The notes under the pieces were generated by a model. The model was not told where the DNA came from. It did not search any database and was given only the letters and a program-made list of their open reading frames with translations. 64,000 nucleotides of DNA. Source: Octopus sinensis (lineage: Eukaryota). The stretch spans positions 183,334,001 through 183,398,000 of the forward strand of contig NC_042997.1 of assembly GCF_006345805.1 (NCBI RefSeq), given 5' to 3'. Shown here piece after piece: positions 5,570 to 62,150 of the stretch (positions are counted from its first letter, which is position 1; every line of letters starts with the position of its first letter). A program made the translations under genes and the position numbers.

Positions 5570-6560
<991 letters not shown>

Positions 6561-7036
6561 ACACTCATGTATGTGTAAATATTAAATAACTTTCATATGA
6601 TCGTTTTAAAGAATGTGCGAAAAAAAAAAAGTATAAGTTTTCATAGCTAAATTTGTTTATTTAGAATCCACTCCATCCATCCATCCCCCACCTTCGTGCG
6701 AATTTAGACGAACTTTATATATTTGCACTTTAAGAGCTCTATTACTTTGTTTCCTTTTGTTACACGTCAGAGCTCGTCTCTTTTAAATGGTCGGTCCTCG
6801 GCTGTTAGTTTCAACAGAGTTATGCCCCTTCTTGAAATAATTTACCCTACCTTTCACTTCCATTACTAAACAATCAAACAAAATGGCGCAATAGTTCCAG
6901 ACTAGAGCTTTTCAGCATCTGCTTTTATTTTTGCCTAGCTCGTATATTTATAGACATTTGTATTAGTTTTTGTTCCACCAAATCCCAGCTACAGATAGCT
7001 ACATCAACAACATATATAGGTGCGGGGTTTCCTGCC

Positions 7037-7923
7037 ATGCCAAAGAAGAAAAAGAAAATGAGTTACGAAAGACGTCGAAGACAAGACAGAAGTCGCAAGA
7101 GATTATTTCGTGGTTCACAGTCTGATTTATCTCCAATGAACGGTAATCATGGTAATTATGTTTCAAAAGCTTATGCTATTAATGAATTTAATTTTGAGGA
7201 TTTGGATCGAATGATTATGTTTATTACGGAATCGAAACAAATTCAGGGTCGCTACTACGTTCGTTATCTTCCAGGCATGCTTAATTCCGCTGGAGAATTG
7301 ACTCCATGTAATTATAGACCCGTTTTCAGCTTTACTTCTACTGCTGCTTCATCTGATTATAACTTTATCCAAAATAATGATTACAGCGATGGTTCCCCTG
7401 AAGTTGTTGACCTAACTGACAGCGACGGTGTTTCGTCGGAAAACAGCAATCCTGCATCGCCAACTTCACCTTCAACTGTTGACGAAACTCAGAGAAACAT
7501 ATTGAAGTTGAAGGTTCAGAAAATGGTGAACCCGGTGAAAAAAAAGATTCGAAAAGTGAAACACCGGGAGCAGAAAAAGCGAACGTATCTAAATCGATAC
7601 CAGGGTTTTTATCAACGATAAACAGGAAACAAACCGCACGGAAAAGTATGCGGCAACAAACTGAATCTTTGTCTTGCGGAACTGAAAACAGTGCATCTCC
7701 GGCGATGGACATGGAAACGGAAAGTTCGTCCGTTTCTGCTTCTAATTCCGATTCAGTAAATACCAATAATAATATTCGAAGTAAAAGTACCAGTAGTTCT
7801 ATCAACAAAAATAACCTTGTAGCTAACTCCTCGCTAACTAGCAACTGTAAGACTAAGCTACCATCTGATAAGTGGGACATTTTGGATGGAATAACAGTGA
7901 CTATGAATCCGGATTTTCGATGA
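7037..7923 (+). CDS. Intronless ORF, ~295 aa if one frameshift near 7483-7546 is repaired; unknown nuclear-type low-complexity protein (NLS, SIM, H3-tail mimic)
   Basis: gccATG start; frame 2 open 7037-7621; frame 1 open 7483-7923. The acidic/Ser-rich composition before ~7485 continues in frame 1 (SEKHIEVEGSENGEPGEKKDSKSE...), not frame 2. No repeats inside; CpG-rich. No family recognised. Confidence 0.6.
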
Positions 7924-10900
7924 CCTAACGTTGTTCCCTCTTGTACAAAGAAAGAAAAAAAAAAAGATACAAAACAAAACAAAAAAAAAGACAAAAAAAA
8001 AATTTAATCATGTAAACTTTTACCAATTCGTAGCATATACATTAATTTCATGAATTCATTCATTCAAAGCGAATTTCTCGTTTCTACTCATGAATTTTCC
8101 AACATGGCTGCCTGATTGATAATTGATTACAGGTATCTATTGAATGGATTAGTCACTTTAACTGGAAATTAGTGAGTGTGCAAATTATATTCTAGTTTTG
8201 TTCGGCCAAATTTTTTGGTATCTATTGCTACATTAGGACTCCTGCACTGATGTCACGTGTTTCAGCAGCCATATTGAGACGATTTTAGCTGGCTGAACTA
8301 ATTTAGTCACAGGCACTGCTGCATTTAAAGTTCCGATTTTCATCTGATAATGTGTTCATTTTTATCCTCCTTCTCTATAAATATTGAAACAAAACAAAAC
8401 AAAAAAAAAACAAACAAACATTTTTTTTTTTTTCGAGAAATATCCTCAACATATATATATTTTATTTTCTATTGTAAAGAAAATGGGAAATGTTCCGAAG
8501 ATGAACCTAAATAATCTACATTTTTTGGACAGGATACTCTGAGTCGGCTAAACTTAAATGACAAAAGAAAAAAAAATTTATTCGAGAAAGGCGGGTTTAC
8601 TATGTTTATACATATGTATGTGTTTCATATATATTTATAGATATATAAAAACCTGTTGATGTTCCTTCAGCTTGTGTTCAAAACAAAAATGCTGTGTGTC
8701 TATTTACGTCTCACTTAGCTTTAATATTTCTTCTTTTTTCCTATTTGCTCCCCCCCTCTTCTCCCTCCCTTTCTCGTTTTAAAAGGTAATATTTAATTAA
8801 TCATTATTTAATACTTGGAAACCTTTACTCTAAGACTGTAAACCTTCTTGTGGTTATTGCTTTCACTTACTTTTAAGATCTGACTGATACTTTCAACAAA
8901 CAAACAATTTGAAAGGAAACAATTTTTTTATATATGAAAAATACATGTAGAAAAAGCAAGCCACTCAATTTCATAAAAGGTTCATAATCATATGACTGCC
9001 ATGCTGACTTGATTTATATTTTATTCAGTACCTTAAAATGTATATCATCTTGATAAACTTTTTTTGTCTCCCTTCTTTATAAAACTTCATTTTTTCTCTT
9101 CATTTCAAGTTAAAAAATAAATCTTAGTTGTGAGAATGTTGACCTTTTTGTACCTTTATTTAAAAAAAAAAATTAACGATTGAAAAATATTTTTAAAATG
9201 TGCTCTCAAGACTTCAATATTTACATACACAGACACACACAAAAAAATTACTGTTGGTGTTGTTTTAGTTGTAGAAAAACGTTTGAATAAGTATTTTGAG
9301 GAGATATTTACATTTGCAGAAAAATGAATGGCTAGTCGTATGTGCTTGACATAAGTGTTTATGGATTATATATACAGCATTAGATATATAGAACATTGAA
9401 GTTTTAAGTAAGTCGTATTTATGAATCATATCATAACGTCTTCTGGTGATATTATTTAATATACAAAATGGTTTAAAAGCAAGTGTTTATAATTTAAACT
9501 AAACTATTTTTAAAATACTGCTCCCAGATCTGGATTCATTGTTCTTTGTTTACATATTTTGGCTTTCATCAAATAGCTGTTATACGATCTTGTTTTATAT
9601 ATGCAATAGTTTATTTGTAACATTTTGACATATTTGTTCTGGAGAGTACAATACTTTGATTTCCAAATATATAGGATAGATACATTATTTAATGTTCGTT
9701 TGCATAGGAAGTGGGTTTTTTTTAAGGTTTTCACGATAACATTTTTTGATTCAATTTTTAAAAAATATTTGACAACAGTTGTGTTGGGAGTTGTGGATAT
9801 TAATTAATGGAATTGCCCGTGAACGAATTAAAATTTCTATTTTGTTGCAAATTAATTGCATTCAAGAAAGTTGTTGACGTTGCTTGGCGTATCAGAGATT
9901 TTTTCTTTCTAATAGCTTAACCACCGACATTGGTCTTTGTATTATATACAATCTGAATAAGTCTCTCTCTTTGCTCTAATTTTTTTCTTTTTCTTACAAA
10001 TTAAGGTTATATTTGTTGCATTTAAGTTGTTTTGCCATTAAAAACTGACTCGCTGATTTATAGCTAAACTAATAATTTTAATTGTTGGAGTGTCCCCGGT
10101 CAATTCTATTGTCAGCATGGAGGCTGCTGATTAAATAATCATTATTTTTTCAAGTCGTGGCTATCCCGTCTTGCGAAAGGAAGAACACTGCAATTGGGAC
10201 GTTCTTATTTAGCAACTATCGCAATAGCAACCGATCTGTTTCCCATTTATATCATTGTATACACTATTATTTTTTGTGCAGAAGCTTACTTATTGACAAC
10301 AACCTAGTTTCTTCAAGAAATCATGCTAATTTCATTGTATCGTTTTATTATATTCAAAAGAAAAAAATTATTACTTCGTCCTATGAAGAAAGGCATTGTT
10401 CATTATCGCCTGTACTGAAACGGGTTGGGCTGTCTGGACAAATTGAGTGCATTTAATTCTTCGACTGAGTTGAGTGTGGGAGGGCGGTGTGGCTACGGGA
10501 AAGATACTTGTTTGAGTAGGAGGAGGCGTATAAAATGCATGTTCAGTGGCAGTTGTAGGAAAAGCAGTAACGGTTTATAGTGGGAGGACAGCTCAACAAC
10601 TGGCTGGTGATAGCTTATTAGTTTCATATTGGCCCTGATCGAGCACACCTATGAGCTCTTTCAGTCGTGATCAGTGTGTCCTTTTTTTTTTTCCATCCAG
10701 GATCGCGTTATTTTAATGTGTTTCATGTGCTTTGTGGGCGGTATGGTAGCATTCAATGGAAATTTGTGGCTGTTCTTTCTAGCCGGTCGGCCGATCGTTG
10801 CCATGTCAAGTTTTTTTTTTTCTCCTTTGTCGTATTTCATTGACAGGTTGTTGGTAAAGTAATTCCAGTCGTGGAAACAATATTCGGTGTTGTATATTTT

Positions 10901-11696
10901 TAGTTCAGGAATGACGGAGATATTGGCTTTTGAACAGAGATCACTCGAAATACGTCCAAGCGATTTTGAGTGTAGTTAATAAAGCTAATTGTTTATTTTA
11001 TCATGACATAACAAGAAAGCTTAGCGCTTATGTCCGATTTGCGGGATCTTTTGCCTCTGGTAAACCAAAACACTGATGCAGTTACATTGCCAAATATATT
11101 TAAGGATTTTTACAGTTGCCCGCTAAGTTAGGTCTAGTAGTGTTGTAATAGTTAATCAGTTGTTATTACTTCTATTTAACTTGGATATGTTTGTGATTGT
11201 TTTGGAGTTTTGTCAGTTAGGTTTATTGAAATTTTAGATTGTCAATGGAAAAAAAAAAAAGAATTAAATATTAGATTAAAATAAATGTAAGCAGAAGAAA
11301 CCGTAGCTAATCGAGCTTCGATAGTAGAACCAAAACAGTAGCAGCTAGTGTGATAGTGGCCGAAGAATGCGTTTAACCAATTCTTTCAAGCCTACATAAT
11401 ATCTTTCTAAATATTAGCCGTCGTAGTTTGCGATAAGCAGTTGCTATTATTTACTTTATGAATTTAACATTGCAAAAACACGACAGATGCTTAACACTAT
11501 AGTGTTAAAATTTATATTATAAATACTTATACTAATGAGAAGTACTTTGTGTCAAAAACAGCAGAATTTTTCCTGATGAAATGTGTGTGTATGTATTTAT
11601 GTGTGCGTGTATATATATATATGCGTGCGTGTATATATATGTATATAATGTGCGTGTATAAATATGTATATAATGTCTGTTTATATATGTATATCA

Positions 11697-19739: not shown

Positions 19740-20065
19740 TGTGATACCCATGCTGGTGGCACATAAAAAGCACCATCCAAATGTGGCCGATGTCAGCGCT
19801 ACCTTGGCTGGCTTATGTGCCAGTGCATGTAAAAAGCACCAACTGATCGTGGCCGTTGCCAGCCTCCCCTGGCACCTGTGCCGGCAGCACGTAAAAAGCA
19901 CCCACTACACTCACGGAGTGGTTGGCATTAGGAAGGGAATCCAGCTGTAGAAACACTGCCAGATCAGACTGGAGCCTGGTGCAGCCTCCTGGCTTCCCAG
20001 ACCCCGGTCGAACTGTCCAACCCATGCTAGCATGGAAAATGGACGTTAAATGATGATGATGATGT
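19740..20065 (+). mobile_element. RTE 3' UTR fragment with repeated TGGCAC(A/G)TAAAAAGCACC units
   Basis: Shared tail ending GGACGTTAAATGATGATGATGATG. Confidence 0.82.
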
Positions 20066-27309: not shown

Positions 27310-27760
27310 CCTTGGATCGCAGGACAGCTTGCTGTGTTTACCTTGGATCGTAGGGCAACCAGCTGTGCTTGAGGAGACCTAATGAGTCAAGTACATCAAC
27401 ATCAAAAAGTTAAATGGAAATTGTAGTTGTGATACCTGTGCCGGTGGCACGTAAAAAGCACCATCCGAATGTGGCCGATGCCAGTGCCGCTTTGACTGGC
27501 TTCTGTACTGGTGGCACGTAAAAAGCACCAACCGATCCTGGCCGTTGCCGGCCTCCCCTGGTACCTGTTCTGGCGGCATGTAAAAAGCACCCACTACACT
27601 CACTGAGTGGTTGGCGTTAGGAAGGGCATCCAGCTGTAGAAACACTGCCAAATCATACTGGAGCCTGGTGCAGCCTCCTGGCTTCCCAGACCCTGGTCGA
27701 ACCGTCCAATCCATGCTAGCATGGAAAACGGATGTTAAACGATGATGATGATGACGACGA
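27310..27760 (+). mobile_element. RTE 3' UTR fragment
   Basis: Repeated TGGCACGTAAAAAGCACC units and (GAT)n tail. Confidence 0.8.
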
Positions 27761-27946
27761 CGAAGAAGAAGAAGAAACATTGTTTCAGAAGCATGTATGG
27801 TTCTGAAGTATATGTTGTCCCTTTGATACTAGTTTGTTGTAATTTATCTGTCTTATCTAATTCAGCAGTTTATAAAACTGTCATTGAATTATTGAGTTAT
27901 TCTGTTTTTTTACTTTTTTTTCCTTCTTAATTACTTTCATTGTCAG

Positions 27947-32213: not shown

Positions 32214-32368
32214 TTAATAGATTGTTTTTTTTTCTTATATGAAAGTCTATGGTAGAACTTTTGTTTCTTTTCATTTCTACTGTTTTAATGTCCAACATTA
32301 TTAAAATTATATTTTTGATCAACAGAAGCAGTAAAATCTGTAAGAGATTTATATTTCAATTTTCCCAG

Positions 32369-32613
32369 CTCTTCAATAATGTCCGAGCTTATGATCCCGT
32401 CCTGGCAAGGTTACCTCATATGGAGAGAGAACTGTCACACCTCATGAACAATATTCAAATTGTGCGTCGACATAGAAAACATACAACCTTAATGGCTGAG
32501 CAATATGAAGAACTCTTGAACAAATTAATCAACTCACTTCGCAAATGCCAGTTAGAAGCCAGTTTATACTTCTTGAAAGAAGACCTTTCAGATTTTGAAT
32601 TAGTCTTGGAATG
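32369..32613 (+). CDS. TCAIM: TCAIM coding exon (LFNNVRAYDPVLARLPHMERELSHLMNNIQIV...FELVLE)
   Basis: ttttcccAG acceptor, GTTTGT donor; resembles human LFERLPSYFDLQRRLMILEDQISYLLGGIQVV; phases fit. Confidence 0.88.
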
Positions 32614-33189
32614 GTTTGTTGCTCACATATTCCTATCTTACCTTTTTTTGTCAAGAGATTTAGAATGTATTTCATTATTGTTTTATTGTTGTTGTTGTGA
32701 TGATGATGATGCTAGCACATGTTAATTTGACAGGTATTTTATTTTGAAGTTTGGTAAGAACAGGTCTCCTCAGCTCTCAAGAATCTGTCTTAGGATTCTT
32801 GCAGAATATACGATAGCATTTTTCTACAGGTCGACAATGCGAGTTTCAATTCCAATTTCTTTCAGTCTTTAGATAACATTTTGGGTGTTGTGCAAGCACA
32901 CCAATTACTACAGGAATAATTGTTGTCTTGTTCTTCCAAAGTCTCCTCAGCTTTCTGGCTAAATAAATACATACATACATGCATGCATACATACATACAT
33001 ACATACATATATACATATGTATGTACACACACACACACACTCAAACTCATATTATCATACATGTGAATATAGATGCAGGCATGGCTATGTGGTAGAAATT
33101 TTTCTTTTTGGCCATATGTTCAGTCCTTCTGTGTGGCACTTTGGGCTAGTGTCTTCAAGAACAGCTCCAGGCTGACCAAAACCTTGTGA

Positions 33190-40479: not shown

Positions 40480-40665
40480 AGGTGGCACGTAAAAAACACC
40501 CACTACACTCGCGGAGTGGTTGGCGTTAGGAAGGGCATCCAGCCGTAGAAACACTGCCAGATCTGACTGGGCCTGATGAAGCCTTCCAGCTTCACAGACC
40601 CCAGTTGACCCGTCCAACCCATGCTAGCATGGAAAACGGACGCTAAACGATGATGATGATGATAT
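40480..40665 (+). mobile_element. RTE 3'-tail fragment just downstream of the TCAIM stop
   Basis: Shared tail sequence. Confidence 0.8.
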
Positions 40666-50305: not shown

Positions 50306-51891
50306 GTTAGTTAGTTAGTTAGTTAATTTGGCTCAAAAGCAAATAGCAAGGCCATGTAGGGGGACATGGAGTTAAGTACAGGGTGGTGTTCATGTAAAGA
50401 GTTCAGGCCACTTGAGGTCCAGGGAGGCTTTGAACAAAGTGGTCATCGGCATCTTCACCATCTCGTCTGGCAGCTTGTTTCACGGATCCGCAACCCGGAC
50501 GGAGAAAGCTCCTCTCCTTCGATTGAGATGAAATCATCGCAGGTAGAGCTTTTCGGAATGACCCCGCAGCCGACGCTCTGGAGCAGGAGTGAAGAACAGC
50601 TCTTTCGAGAGGTTACACTTTCCGCTTATGATGTTGTGGGCGAGAATGAGATCACTACGGCGGCGGCGTTTTTCAAGAGAATAAAGGTCGAGCGTCCTCA
50701 GCCTTTCTTCGTAGGATAAATTTTTGAGACCATGAACCATGCGGGTAGCCAGCTTCTGGACTCTTTCGAGATGCTGTATGTCTTTGAGGAGATAAGGAGA
50801 AGAGGCTTGAATCCCATACTCCAATATGGGTCTCACCAGCGTGACATAGAGTGGTAGGAATATGGCTACTGTGAGCATTCCGAATGACTGTCGAATCAAG
50901 AACAGAATTCCGCGTGCTTTGTTGGCAGCATGGACGCACTGGGCCGAAGGCGAAAAGGAGGAATCCACCAAGATACCTAGGTCCTTTACCTGATCGGTCC
51001 TCTCCAGCAGCAGACGACCCGGCTCGAAATCAAGTTGAGTTGCAGGAGTAGAGCCGACAGGCAGATGACAGCACTTTGACACATTCAGACACAGGTCCCA
51101 ATCGTTAGACCACTTCCAAATTTGGTGGAGGCATCGACGAAGATCCTCTATATTACCGCGAGGAGCGACCAGTTTGATATCGTCGGCAAATAGAAGGGTG
51201 TGTTGCGTGAGGTCGTCGGGCAAGTCATTTATGAAGACTAAGAACAACAAGGGCCCAAGCACTGAACCTTGAGGCACGCCACTGCTCGCACTGGAGACGG
51301 ACCGCGAACCATTAACTTGGACTTGGAAGGAGCGATCTGAGAGGAAGGCACCAACCCATCGTACAATATCCGGATGGAAACTATATGCTTGAAGCTTGAC
51401 AAGTAATAGGCGGTGGTTTACCGAGTCAAAAGCTTTGGCAAAGTCCAGTAAAACGATGTCAACAGCATCACTATCATCGAGGATGCGCGTCACCAATTCT
51501 TCCATTACTAGTAAGTTGGTCAAGCATGATCTCTTCGGCACAAAGCCGTGTTGGGAATCGGAGATAGAGGCTGTGTTTAGGAGGTGGAGCATCATACTTT
51601 TCTTAAGGATGGTTTCGAACATCTTGCTGATTATTGATGTATGGGAAACCGGTCGGTAGTTAAGCGGGTCTTCGCGGCTCCCTTTCTTGAAAATTGGGCA
51701 GATTATCGCTGTTCTCCAGTCTGCAGGTATAACACCCATCGCCAATGACATTGAATAGTCGTGTTAAGGGCTCGCAGATGACCGGAGCCAACGCTTTGAT
51801 AACCCGTGGGTGTATGCCGTCAGGGCCGTGACCCTTGTTGACATCAAGGCCTTGAATAACACGTTTGACTTCGTCCCGCGTGATGACCAAT
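50306..51891 (-). mobile_element. CR1/L2-group LINE, 5'-truncated, GC-rich, RT almost intact
   Basis: 405-aa ORF with QHGF, LDFAKAFDSV, GVPQGSVLGPLLF, FADD; frameshift near 51752; TGA stops near the 3' end; (AACT)n tail; inserted in an RTE tail. Confidence 0.92.
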
Positions 51892-52207
51892 CGAAGCCAT
51901 CTGGTTCACCAGTCTTCAGTCAAATCGTCCAACCCATGCTAGCATGGAAATCGGACGTTAAACGATGATGATGAAATGTGAGATGCAGACAAATATACAA
52001 TCTAAATCTTAAGATTTACATCACACACATGCATAACAAAGAAAATAACATTACTAGACACTGAAAATATTACATATTCTCGATATAAAAGAAAAACACA
52101 AACTATACTGTGTTCTGAAGGCATGTGTAGCCGTGTTGGGTTGTGATATAAAAATATGTAATAGAACAAGTGCAATAAAGAATTAAAAACATCAGCCTTC
52201 AACTCAC

Positions 52208-60479: not shown

Positions 60480-61530
60480 AGTTTAATGGAATGAATTCAG
60501 TGTAGTGATATAAGTTGGTAAAGATAGTATAAAACTAAAAATATTTAAAATACAGTCATTAGATTTGGATTTAAATTGAATATAAGATTGACTGAGGGAG
60601 AAGTTTAGGAAATGGAAGGAGGTGTTTGAAAGCAAGGGTTTAAAGGTAAACCTCAGGAAGACAAAGGTGATGGTGAGCAGGGTGGAAGAAGTGTTAGTAA
60701 GGTAGATCCATGTGGTGTGTGTGAGAGAGACGGGTAATGGCAAATGTGGTGTTGTGTATGAAATGTGAGAAATGGATTCATGGTAGATGTACGTAAATGA
60801 AGAAGGTGACCCAAAGAGATTTTATTTGTGGAAGATGTGAGAAAGAAGCTGGAGGGGTGGCGGAATCAGCGGAAATGCTACGTGATGAGATGGAAACGGC
60901 GAGGGTTTTGTTATTTGGTAGATAGGGTGGATGTAAGTGGTGGATTTGAAGCAGCTGTGACAACAAGAGCGAGACTTGGCTGGGTGAAGTTCAGGGAATG
61001 TGGAGTGTTATTATATGGGAAAAAGTTCTCCTTGAAGATGAAAGGAAGGGTTTATCGGAGTTGTGTGAGAGCTGCAATGATGTATGGGAGTGAGACATGG
61101 TGTCTGAGGGAAAGTGAAATGGCAATTTTGAGAAGGACCGAGAGAGCAATGGTGAGAGCAATGTGTGGTGTGAAACTATTGGATAAAAGGAGGGCTGAGG
61201 ACTTGATGGAGATGCTGGAGGAATCAGTGGAACAGTTAGCAAGGGCAAATGGAGTGCTGTGGTATGGACATGTGATGAGGAGGGATGAGAATCATGTTCT
61301 GAGGAAAGTGTTTGAGGTTAAAGTGAATGAACTGTGAAAGCAAGGTTGAAAAAAGAACACATGGAGGGAACAGGTGGAGGAGGAGATTGGGAGGATTGGC
61401 TTGAGGAGGGAGGATGCCCAAAACTGGGCGAGATGGTGTGAGAGCAGTTACCGTAAGAGTGAGGTAGATTTGGCCACCCCTGTTAACTGGGACAAACCCG
61501 GATTTAAAATATTGGAATTCATTCATTGAG
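60480..61530 (+). mobile_element. RTE LINE 3' fragment (second RTE family)
   Basis: GWVKFREC...KGRVYRSCVRAAMMYGSETW...WYGHVMRR. Confidence 0.85.
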
Positions 61531-61824: not shown

Positions 61825-62150
61825 CATCATCCTCATCATTTAACGTCCGCTTTCCATGCTAGCATGGGTTGGACGATTTGACTGAGGACTGGCGAACCAG
61901 ATGGCTATGCGAGGCTCCAGTCTAATCTGACAGAGTTTTTACAGCTGGATGCCCTTCCTAATGCCAACCATTCCAAGAATGTAGTGGGTGCTTTTATGTG
62001 CCACTGGCACAAGGGCCAGTCTGGCGGTACTGGTAACGACCACACTCGAAATGGTGTTTTTATGTGCCACCTGCACAGTAGTCAGTCCAGCAGCACTGGC
62101 AATGACCTCGCTCGAATGTTTTGTTCACGTGCCAGTAAGGCGATGTGAAC
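61825..62150 (-). mobile_element. RTE 3'-tail fragment
   Basis: Reverse complement of the shared tail. Confidence 0.8.

What the first reader, a model, noticed from the sequence alone, without database searches (positions are those of the whole stretch)
7627..7650. Hidden histone H3 tail mimic (KQTARKS) in the frameshifted half of an orphan ORF
Seen: frame 1 at 7627-7647 reads K-Q-T-A-R-K-S, identical to H3 K4-S10, followed by MRQQ. The ORF track starts at the ATG just after it, so it is missed. Established: ARK(S/T) mimics are G9a/GLP substrates read by HP1/MPP8-type chromodomains (ARKTM in G9a/GLP, ARKTMR in ATF7IP). Inference: this may be an undescribed, lineage-restricted heterochromatin adaptor or decoy for H3K9 writers and readers.
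Basis: partly seen in the sequence, partly recalled or inferred. Interest (0 to 1): 0.75.

Follow-up and report, generated by a model that had tools for sequence, protein, structure and literature searches.

The report
Conserved histone H3 mimic in octopus protein
An uncharacterised, mostly disordered protein found only in octopus and a few related sequences carries a stretch identical to the histone H3 tail (KQTARKS). The stretch is perfectly conserved while its surroundings diverge, so it is probably a real histone mimic, although this window's copy of the gene has a one-base frameshift.

Summary
Frame 1 at 7627-7647 reads KQTARKS, then MRQQ. It lies in the second half of a gene split here by a 1-bp deletion at about 7491.

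Three other octopod copies are intact. One is UniProt A0A0L8HZE9, an uncharacterised Octopus bimaculoides protein. Frame 1 is the coding frame: the half after the frameshift has 11 synonymous and 5 non-synonymous differences (P = 8e-5), and dN/dS for the whole gene is 0.12.

An exhaustive HMMER scan of 1.84 billion proteins found only two more relatives, at 46-49% identity. In both, KQTARKSMR is invariant (9 of 9 residues) inside a disordered region where 15 of 117 other columns are invariant. Seven of its nine codons carry only synonymous changes.

The family has no Pfam, PDB or fold match. Its other conserved blocks are a basic N-terminus, a roughly 56-residue core, a P[ED]VVDLT segment identical to the SUMO-interacting cores of RNF4 and PIAS4, and a C-terminal tail.

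The motif satisfies every position of the published G9a specificity and shares ARK[ST]MR with ATF7IP K16.

Function as an H3K9-like substrate or reader ligand is inferred, not shown. Whether the frameshift is an assembly error is unresolved.

The parts
7037..7923 (+). Single-exon coding sequence of the family member. It is read in frame 2 up to about 7490 and in frame 1 from 7492 to the stop at 7921-7923. It is the orthologue of the intact 295-aa P0001 and of O. bimaculoides A0A0L8HZE9.
   Evidence: dN/dS is 0.12, with P = 4e-8 for the excess of synonymous changes. In-frame stops lie upstream of the ATG in the window and in the relatives.
7491..7491 (+). Site of the 1-bp deletion (frameshift). 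The window has one A where the relative L001 has AA (CAAGAG becomes CAGAG). Frame 2 then runs on for 43 codons to TAA at 7619-7621.
   Evidence: Alignment A1. P0001, P0004 and P0005 are all intact across this point. The truncated 194-aa product is not on record in any other assembly.
7058..7102 (+). Conserved basic N-terminal block, MS[YF]..RRRQ...RKR. It is probably a nuclear localisation signal (inference). The ATG at 7058 (M8) aligns with the start codon of the distant relatives and shares their AAAATGAG context.
7166..7333 (+). Conserved core (P0001 residues 44-99): KAYA..EDLDR.IMFITESKQIQGRYYVRYLPGM.N..GELTPCNYRP.FSF. It holds a run of 22 invariant residues. AlphaFold models it as a long beta-hairpin at modest confidence.
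   Evidence: AF2 gives pLDDT 65-71 for residues 59-82 only. There is no Pfam, PDB-sequence or fold match.
7397..7426 (+). PEVVDLTDSD: a SUMO-interacting-motif-type block, with VVDLT invariant and an acidic/Ser flank.
   Evidence: Invariant V123-T127. The same core occurs in the RNF4 SIM3 peptide SLEPVVVDLTHND and in the PIAS4 SIM VVDLT.
7627..7653 (+). KQTARKSMR. The first seven residues are identical to histone H3 K4-S10. ARKSMR parallels ATF7IP ARKTMR.
   Evidence: sequence and codons; invariance; literature on ARK[ST] motifs and G9a specificity.
7870..7920 (+). Conserved extreme C-terminal block, KW..LDGIT.T.NPDF[RG]-COOH. Its function is unknown; it is presumably a partner-binding motif.

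Best explanation
The window holds a single-exon gene for a nuclear protein of about 290 aa that is mostly intrinsically disordered. The family is known only from octopods and two more distant, unnamed sequence sets, which are probably other cephalopods.

The protein is a string of short conserved motifs: a basic N-terminus, a roughly 56-residue core, a VVDLT SUMO-interacting-type motif, KQTARKSMR, and a C-terminal tail.

Shown here:
- The gene is real and under purifying selection in the frame that encodes the motif.
- The motif is invariant across 46-49% identical relatives, and only synonymous codon changes occur in it.
- This window's copy carries a 1-bp deletion upstream of the motif.

Inferred:
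- KQTARKSMR acts as an internal histone H3 K4-S10 mimic. Its lysine, which corresponds to H3K9, is methylated by an EHMT (G9a/GLP)-type H3K9 methyltransferase.
- The methylated form is then bound by HP1/MPP8/CDYL-type chromodomains. The unmethylated form occupies the enzyme as a pseudo-substrate.
- The adjacent serine offers an Aurora-type phospho switch.
- The SIM tethers the protein to SUMOylated chromatin factors.
- Taken together, the protein would couple SUMO marks to the H3K9 methyl machinery, much as ATF7IP combines a SIM with a G9a-methylated ARKTMR motif.
- The frameshift in this window is more likely an assembly or individual-level error than an old pseudogenisation.
For: Gene and frame:
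- Intact 295-aa relative.
- One-base gap in the window.
- dN/dS 0.12.
- Frame-specific excess of synonymous changes downstream of the shift, P = 7.7e-5, with the other frames full of stops.
- The CDS has a single 1-bp gap, while 1.5 kb of 3' flank has 254 gapped bases.

Distribution: three clusters in 1.84e9 representatives. One member is named: Octopus bimaculoides A0A0L8HZE9.

Motif constraint:
- 9 of 9 invariant against 15 of 117 elsewhere, and 0 of 200,000 shuffles reach a run of 9.
- The codons are AAA/AAG, CAA/CAG, ACC/ACG, GCA/GCT/GCC, CGG/AGA/AGG, AGT/AGC and CGG/AGG, all synonymous.

Disorder: AF2 pLDDT 39-43.

Fit to known biochemistry:
- G9a needs TARKSTG-type sites: R next to K, Ala before R, then a hydrophilic and then a hydrophobic residue after K. 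TARKSM meets each of these.
- ARKT motifs of G9a, GLP and mAM are methylated as efficiently as H3, and they bind HP1 once methylated.
- ATF7IP K16 in KARKTMRAS is trimethylated by G9a/GLP and read by the MPP8 chromodomain.
- VVDLT is the SIM core of RNF4 SIM3 and PIAS4.
Against: - There are no biochemical data of any kind.
- The methyltransferase and the readers have not been identified in these species.
- An internal motif cannot mimic the free H3 N-terminus that many H3K4 readers need, so the conservation of K and Q at the start of the motif is not explained by G9a or HP1 alone.
- The motif is also a good basophilic-kinase site (R-K-S-M) and is basic enough to help nuclear import.
- Only three divergent lineages were available, so the sample for conservation is small.
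- Neither expression nor the taxa of the two distant relatives could be established.
- In this window the motif lies out of frame.
Confidence: 0.55

Rival explanations
1. The motif is a real H3-tail mimic, but it serves other H3-tail machinery rather than the G9a/HP1 axis. Candidates are Aurora B with PP1 (phosphorylation of the S10-like serine), UHRF1-type tandem Tudor domains (which read K4 together with K9me, as with LIG1 K126), KDM4/KDM3 demethylases, or the importin and chaperone route that recognises the H3 tail.
For: K and Q at the H3 K4/Q5 positions are invariant, yet they lie outside the minimal G9a site TARKSTG. R-K-S-M fits the R-x-S/T-hydrophobic preference of Aurora kinases (own knowledge). 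Papers found with KQTARKS include work on importin-4 binding of the H3 tail and on Aurora B and the chromosomal passenger complex (CPC) (titles only).
Against: ARK[ST]M(R) is shared with three proven G9a/GLP substrates: G9a, GLP and ATF7IP. Nothing here discriminates between readers.
Confidence: 0.2
2. The conserved nonamer is an ordinary basic linear motif, such as a kinase site, a 14-3-3 site or part of a nuclear localisation signal. Its identity to H3 would then be coincidental, with no link to chromatin modification.
For: The motif is short and basic, and the protein already has a basic N-terminus. ARKS alone occurs three times in the six-frame translation of the window, about once being expected by chance. 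There are no functional data.
Against: Seven consecutive residues identical to H3 are expected 1.2e-4 times per window even in six frames. The match extends, through M-R, to the ATF7IP substrate motif. It also sits in a protein with an invariant SIM-type block identical to those of chromatin-associated SUMO binders. A generic basic site would tolerate K/R and S/T exchanges, and none is seen across 46-49% identical relatives.
Confidence: 0.15
3. In the species and individual of this window the gene is a true recent pseudogene or a truncated allele. Only a 194-aa product would be made, with the basic N-terminus, core and SIM plus a novel basic tail, so KQTARKS is not translated here.
For: The deletion is in the sequence as given. 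It lies in an AA dinucleotide, not in a long homopolymer, which is where assembly errors are most common. No intact copy specific to this species was found in the protein collection.
Against: There is no second lesion in 887 bases. The 143 codons downstream keep a 5:11 non-synonymous to synonymous ratio and no stop. All three other octopod copies are intact. The frameshifted 194-aa product was not found in any independent assembly.
Confidence: 0.3
4. The region is not protein-coding: a chance ORF, a transposon fragment or a captured fragment of a histone H3 gene.
For: There is no Pfam domain. Repeats and a LINE reverse transcriptase occur elsewhere in the window. The N-terminus of the O. bimaculoides model is repeat-derived.
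Against: Selection is strongly frame-specific. Start and stop positions are conserved in relatives at 46-49% identity. The locus is single-copy in the window, with no flanking terminal repeats other than microsatellite. Similarity to H3 does not extend beyond the seven residues, and there is no histone-fold match.
Confidence: 0.02

Closest known systems
ATF7IP / MCAF1 (vertebrate SETDB1 cofactor), H3K9-like motif at K16
   Same: Both carry ARK[ST]MR: ATF7IP has KARKTMRAS and this family has TARKSMR. In ATF7IP the lysine is trimethylated by G9a/GLP and read by the MPP8 chromodomain. ATF7IP also carries a [VI][VI]DLT-type SUMO-interacting motif (own knowledge), so the combination of SIM and H3K9 mimic is the same.
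   Different: There is no detectable homology. No ATF7IP or FNIII domain is present (Pfam none). The motif order is reversed, with the SIM before the mimic, and the mimic is internal at about residue 200 rather than N-terminal. The protein is about 290-370 aa against more than 1200. Here the match to H3 runs four residues further upstream (KQTA). According, the ATF7IP motif is vertebrate-restricted.
G9a/GLP automethylation motif (ARKT) and other G9a substrates such as LIG1 K126 and WIZ
   Same: Both are ARK[ST] motifs inside a non-histone protein that match G9a specificity. In G9a the methylated form binds HP1.
   Different: Those proteins are enzymes or large multidomain factors conserved across animals. 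This is a small, disordered, lineage-restricted protein, and its methylation is untested.
Histone H3 N-terminal tail
   Same: Residues K4-S10 are identical.
   Different: The motif is internal, not at a free N-terminus. There is no histone fold, and the flanking residues are unrelated (NR/RF before, MR after).
SIM-containing SUMO binders (RNF4 SIM3, PIAS4)
   Same: The P-x-VVDLT core with an acidic flank is identical to the experimentally used SIM peptides.
   Different: There is no RING or SP-RING domain and only a single SIM. SUMO binding is untested.
UniProt A0A0L8HZE9 (Octopus bimaculoides, uncharacterized protein, 357 aa)
   Same: It is the orthologue. It falls in the same 90%-identity cluster as P0001 and differs from the window's conceptual product at about six residues. 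It contains KQTARKSMR.
   Different: Its first 34 residues match a dispersed repeat present at 15 or more places in the window, so they look like a gene-model artefact. It is intact, whereas the window is frameshifted.

Membership tests
Histone H3 (gene, pseudogene or captured fragment) | Histone-fold domain (Pfam Histone PF00125) and an N-terminal tail starting ARTKQTARKS | tested here: not met
   No Pfam family at E <= 1 for either half or for any of the three family members. No PDB sequence match. The motif lies at residue 198 of 295, and similarity is limited to seven residues.
Non-histone H3K9-like substrates of G9a/GLP ('histone mimics') | Sequence fits G9a specificity: R immediately before K, a small hydrophobic residue (Ala) before R, a hydrophilic residue after K, then a hydrophobic one | tested here: met
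   T-A-R-K-S-M against the rule as summarised in PMC8541646 and the ARKT/ARKS kinetics in PMC2175347.
Non-histone H3K9-like substrates of G9a/GLP ('histone mimics') | The motif is evolutionarily constrained beyond its surroundings | tested here: met
   9 of 9 invariant against 15 of 117. 0 of 200,000 shuffles reach a run of 9. Only synonymous codon changes occur.
Non-histone H3K9-like substrates of G9a/GLP ('histone mimics') | The lysine is methylated by G9a/GLP in vitro and in cells | not testable with these tools
   This needs an enzyme assay or mass spectrometry.
Non-histone H3K9-like substrates of G9a/GLP ('histone mimics') | Methyl-dependent binding by a chromodomain or Tudor reader (HP1, MPP8, CDYL, UHRF1) | not testable with these tools
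   No complex prediction or binding assay was available.
ATF7IP/MCAF family | Homologous SETDB1-binding region and C-terminal FNIII domain | tested here: not met
   No Pfam hit of any kind. HMMER over 1.84e9 proteins returns only the three family clusters.
SUMO-interacting motif (SIM) proteins | Hydrophobic core [VI][VI]-D-L-T with an acidic/Ser flank in a disordered region | tested here: met
   P[ED]VVDLT followed by D/E/S is invariant. It is identical to the RNF4 SIM3 and PIAS4 cores. The region is modelled as disordered.
SUMO-interacting motif (SIM) proteins | Binds SUMO | not testable with these tools
   This needs a binding assay.
Orthologous group of O. bimaculoides A0A0L8HZE9 | At least 90% identity over the whole length and collinear flanks | tested here: met
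   Same 90% cluster. tblastn gives 96.5% identity over the C-terminal 143 aa. The L001 contig is collinear with window 6809-11484.

The most novel reading that the evidence does not exclude
A cephalopod-restricted, intrinsically disordered adaptor arose de novo or diverged beyond recognition. It independently evolved a perfect H3 K4-S10 copy next to a SUMO-interacting motif. The protein would then work as a methyl- and phospho-switchable bridge, or as a decoy, between SUMOylated chromatin factors and the H3K9 writer and reader machinery. That would be a lineage-specific functional analogue of the ATF7IP K16 switch, in a group of animals with very repeat-rich genomes.
Probability: 0.35. Interest if true: 0.7.

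Novelty: new member of a known kind. Interest (0 to 1): 0.5.

Why it matters
Endogenous histone-tail mimicry is established for a handful of vertebrate proteins (G9a, GLP, ATF7IP, LIG1 and others). It shows how histone writers and readers are redirected to non-histone targets.

This would be an independent invertebrate example, and the closest to H3 in sequence among the mimics compared here: seven identical residues against four in G9a, GLP and ATF7IP. It sits in a small orphan protein whose only other recognisable feature is a SUMO-interacting motif.

The hypothesis is clean and cheap to test by peptide methylation and chromodomain pull-down. A positive result would give an entry point to heterochromatin regulation in cephalopods.

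There is also a practical point. The gene is split in this assembly and has a repeat-derived N-terminus in the one public gene model, so annotation pipelines misrepresent it.

Tried and rejected
- **Pfam.** Both halves and all three family members gave nothing. The only entry was a sub-threshold UBR4 match at E = 0.075, on low-complexity sequence.
- **PDB sequence and profile searches.** Only low-complexity noise, E >= 0.9.
- **AlphaFold2.** The single sequence and the 3-sequence alignment gave pLDDT 39 and 43. Only a beta-hairpin at residues 59-82 reached 65-71.
- **Foldseek against the PDB.** Nothing below E = 1. The PC4-like hits are hairpin noise.
- **Profile search with the core block alone.** It returned nothing and did not even recover the known members, so it is uninformative about distant homologues.
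- **Profile search with the full alignment.** It was capped at 8000 word-sharing candidates, probably dominated by poly-N/S/D, and returned only the three known clusters.
- **Literature searches.** Nothing for the run accessions, for A0A0L8HZE9, or for 'histone mimic' with 'cephalopod'. The taxa of P0002 and P0003 and the library type of the source runs (RNA or DNA) therefore remain unknown. The contigs end at low-complexity tracts, which does not tell RNA from DNA.
- **Rfam and tRNA scans of the window.** Nothing.
- **Bacterial promoter and terminator scan.** Irrelevant for a eukaryotic locus.
- **Repeat search around the gene.** Only microsatellite and no terminal repeats, so there is no sign of a mobile element carrying the gene.
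- **Antisense 209-aa ORF (7365-7994).** Rejected as coding, because the substitution pattern fits the + strand frames.
- **Look-up of the window's 194-aa product in other assemblies.** Not on record, so the choice between assembly error and real frameshift stays open.

Full report
**1. The observation**

Window 7627-7647 on the + strand, frame 1, reads AAA CAA ACC GCA CGG AAA AGT = KQTARKS, followed by ATG CGG CAA CAA = MRQQ. The ORF lister starts its 91-aa ORF at the ATG at 7648, so the heptapeptide is left out. Frame 1 is open from about 7488 to the stop at 7921-7923. A 194-aa ORF (7037-7621) lies upstream in frame 2.

From the composition of the six-frame translation, KQTARKS is expected 1.2e-4 times in this window. 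ARKS alone is expected about once and is seen three times. In a scan of many windows the bare match could therefore be chance. What follows is the independent evidence.

**2. It is one gene, broken here by one missing base**

A search with the 194-aa ORF found a single cluster. Its representative, P0001, is an intact 295-aa protein that continues straight into the frame-1 sequence and contains KQTARKS. It is encoded on contigs of about 4.5 kb from four sequencing runs (L001-L004). These contigs are collinear with window 6809-11484.

The nucleotide alignment shows one gap in 888 columns. The window has ACTC-AGAG where L001 has ACTCAAGAG, at about window 7491.

The same 90% cluster holds two more members:
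- P0005, 288 aa, starting at the second Met.
- P0004, which is UniProt A0A0L8HZE9, 'Uncharacterized protein, Octopus bimaculoides', 357 aa.

Both are intact, so the window comes from an octopod. It is neither O. bimaculoides itself nor the species behind P0001, since it differs from them at about 6 and 10 residues.

The extra 34 N-terminal residues of the O. bimaculoides model match a dispersed repeat at 15 or more places in the window. They are probably a gene-model artefact. In all lineages an in-frame stop precedes the start codon. The ATG at 7058 aligns with the start of the distant relatives.

**3. Frame 1 is translated and constrained**

Window against L001, skipping the gapped codon:
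- There are 21 synonymous and 10 non-synonymous differences, giving dN/dS = 0.12. The probability under neutrality is 4e-8.
- Downstream of the frameshift, frame 1 has 11 synonymous and 5 non-synonymous differences (P = 7.7e-5) and no stops. The other two frames have 7 and 20 stops and no excess of synonymous changes.
- The CDS carries a single 1-bp gap, whereas 1.5 kb of 3' flank carries 254 gapped bases.

The frameshift is therefore either very recent or an error. I lean towards an assembly or individual-level error, at about 0.7. The grounds are that there is no second lesion and that all three other octopod copies are intact. The tools cannot settle this, because the truncated product is not on record in any other assembly.

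**4. A very restricted family with a motif-on-a-string architecture**

An exhaustive HMMER scan of 1.84 billion cluster representatives found just three proteins: P0001, P0002 (370 aa, 49% identity) and P0003 (362 aa, 46% identity). A profile search of the 5.8-billion collection returned the same three.

P0002 and P0003 come from unnamed sequencing runs. Their taxa could not be established. Other cephalopods is my inference.

The alignment and its run analysis show these conserved blocks:
- RRRQ...RKR at the N-terminus.
- A core, KAYA..EDLDR.IMFITESKQIQGRYYVRYLPGM.N..GELTPCNYRP.FSF, with 22 consecutive invariant residues.
- P[ED]VVDLT followed by acidic residues.
- KQTARKSMR.
- The C-terminal KW..LDGIT.T.NPDF.

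Everything between these blocks is low-complexity sequence that cannot be aligned.

No Pfam family, PDB sequence or fold match exists. AlphaFold models the protein as disordered apart from a hairpin at residues 59-82.

**5. The motif is conserved far above background**

- In the disordered stretch between the VVDLT block and the C-terminal block, 9 of 9 motif columns are invariant, against 15 of 117 other ungapped columns.
- No shuffle out of 200,000 produced a run of nine invariant columns.
- At the DNA level seven of the nine codons differ between lineages: AAA/AAG, CAA/CAG, ACC/ACG, GCA/GCT/GCC, CGG/AGA/AGG, AGT/AGC and CGG/AGG. That is at least nine changes, all synonymous.

The constraint is therefore on the peptide and not on a nucleotide element.

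**6. Most likely mechanism (inferred)**

The motif meets each published determinant of G9a/GLP substrate choice. These are Arg next to the target Lys, Ala before the Arg, and a hydrophilic and then a hydrophobic residue after the Lys. The minimal site is TARKSTG.

ARKT motifs of G9a, GLP and mAM/ATF7IP are methylated as efficiently as H3, and methylated G9a binds HP1. ATF7IP K16, in KARKTMRAS, is trimethylated by G9a/GLP and then read by the MPP8 chromodomain. The cephalopod motif shares ARK[ST]MR with it.

The invariant VVDLT block is identical to the SUMO-interacting cores of RNF4 SIM3 (SLEPVVVDLTHND) and PIAS4.

The best reading is a nuclear disordered adaptor. Its SIM would dock on SUMOylated chromatin proteins. 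Its H3K9-like lysine would be a substrate or pseudo-substrate of an H3K9 methyltransferase and, once methylated, a chromodomain ligand. The adjacent serine could act as a phospho switch.

My confidence that the motif is a functional linear motif is about 0.9. That it engages H3-tail machinery, about 0.75. That the axis is specifically G9a-type writer plus chromodomain reader, about 0.55.

**7. Rivals**

- The motif is an H3 mimic for other machinery (Aurora B, UHRF1 tandem Tudor, demethylases, importins). The invariant K and Q upstream of the minimal G9a site hint that something reads more than TARKS.
- The motif is a generic basic motif with a coincidental match to H3. This is unlikely given seven identical residues, no K/R or S/T exchange, and the SIM context.
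- The window's copy is a real truncated allele. This stays open.
- The region is non-coding, a transposon or a captured H3 fragment. This is refuted.

**8. Comparison and novelty**

The closest known system is ATF7IP, with its SIM plus a G9a-methylated ARKTMR motif. There is no homology to it, no FNIII or SETDB1-binding domain, the motif order is reversed and the size is very different. The protein may work like ATF7IP's methyl switch, but it is not a member of that family.

Histone mimicry by non-histone proteins is a known kind of mechanism. This is a new, lineage-restricted and so far unstudied instance. No paper was found mentioning the UniProt entry or a cephalopod histone mimic.

I score interest at 0.5. 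The prediction is solid, well conserved and easy to test. The concept is established, however, and nothing functional is shown.

Noticed in passing
window 32249-32725 (+): A 158-aa ORF matches Pfam DUF4461 (PF14688) at E = 1.7e-13. It is probably an exon of a conserved multi-exon gene. The H3-mimic gene may lie near or inside that gene.
   Followed up: no
window 50534-51751 (-): A 405-aa ORF carries a reverse transcriptase domain (RVT_1, E = 3.9e-32). It is a LINE-type retroelement fragment. A second ORF at 60828-61337 has no Pfam match.
   Followed up: partly
window, 15 or more dispersed sites, e.g. 19959-20060, 27696-27761, 40601-40663, 51919-51972 and 61829-61882: The first 34 residues of the O. 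bimaculoides gene model A0A0L8HZE9 match a dispersed SINE-like repeat on both strands. The public model's N-terminus is therefore likely a repeat-derived artefact.
   Followed up: partly
window 5880-6550: An imperfect (TA)n microsatellite of about 670 bp lies roughly 490 bp upstream of the gene's ATG. The related contigs L001-L004 all begin just downstream of the corresponding position.
   Followed up: no
window 7945-8002 and 8379-8425: A-rich tracts (AAAAGATACAAAACAAAAC...) begin about 20 bases after the stop codon and occur again 420 bases later. For an intron-less gene this could be the remnant of a retroposed poly(A) tail. The distant relatives show T-rich sequence after the stop instead.
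   Followed up: no
window 7037-7057: The octopod-specific extension MPKKKKK upstream of the conserved start (M8 at 7058) corresponds to an A/G-rich 5' UTR in the distant relative L005 (..AAGAAGAAAATGAGC). The first ATG may be a recent upstream start, or it may not be used.
   Followed up: partly
window 6809-7036 and 7924-9423 against L001: In the aligned columns, the flanks are as similar to the relative (95-96%) as the CDS is. They differ mainly by indels, and synonymous divergence (0.12) exceeds the substitution divergence of the flanks. This may reflect constrained UTRs or an alignment bias.
   Followed up: no
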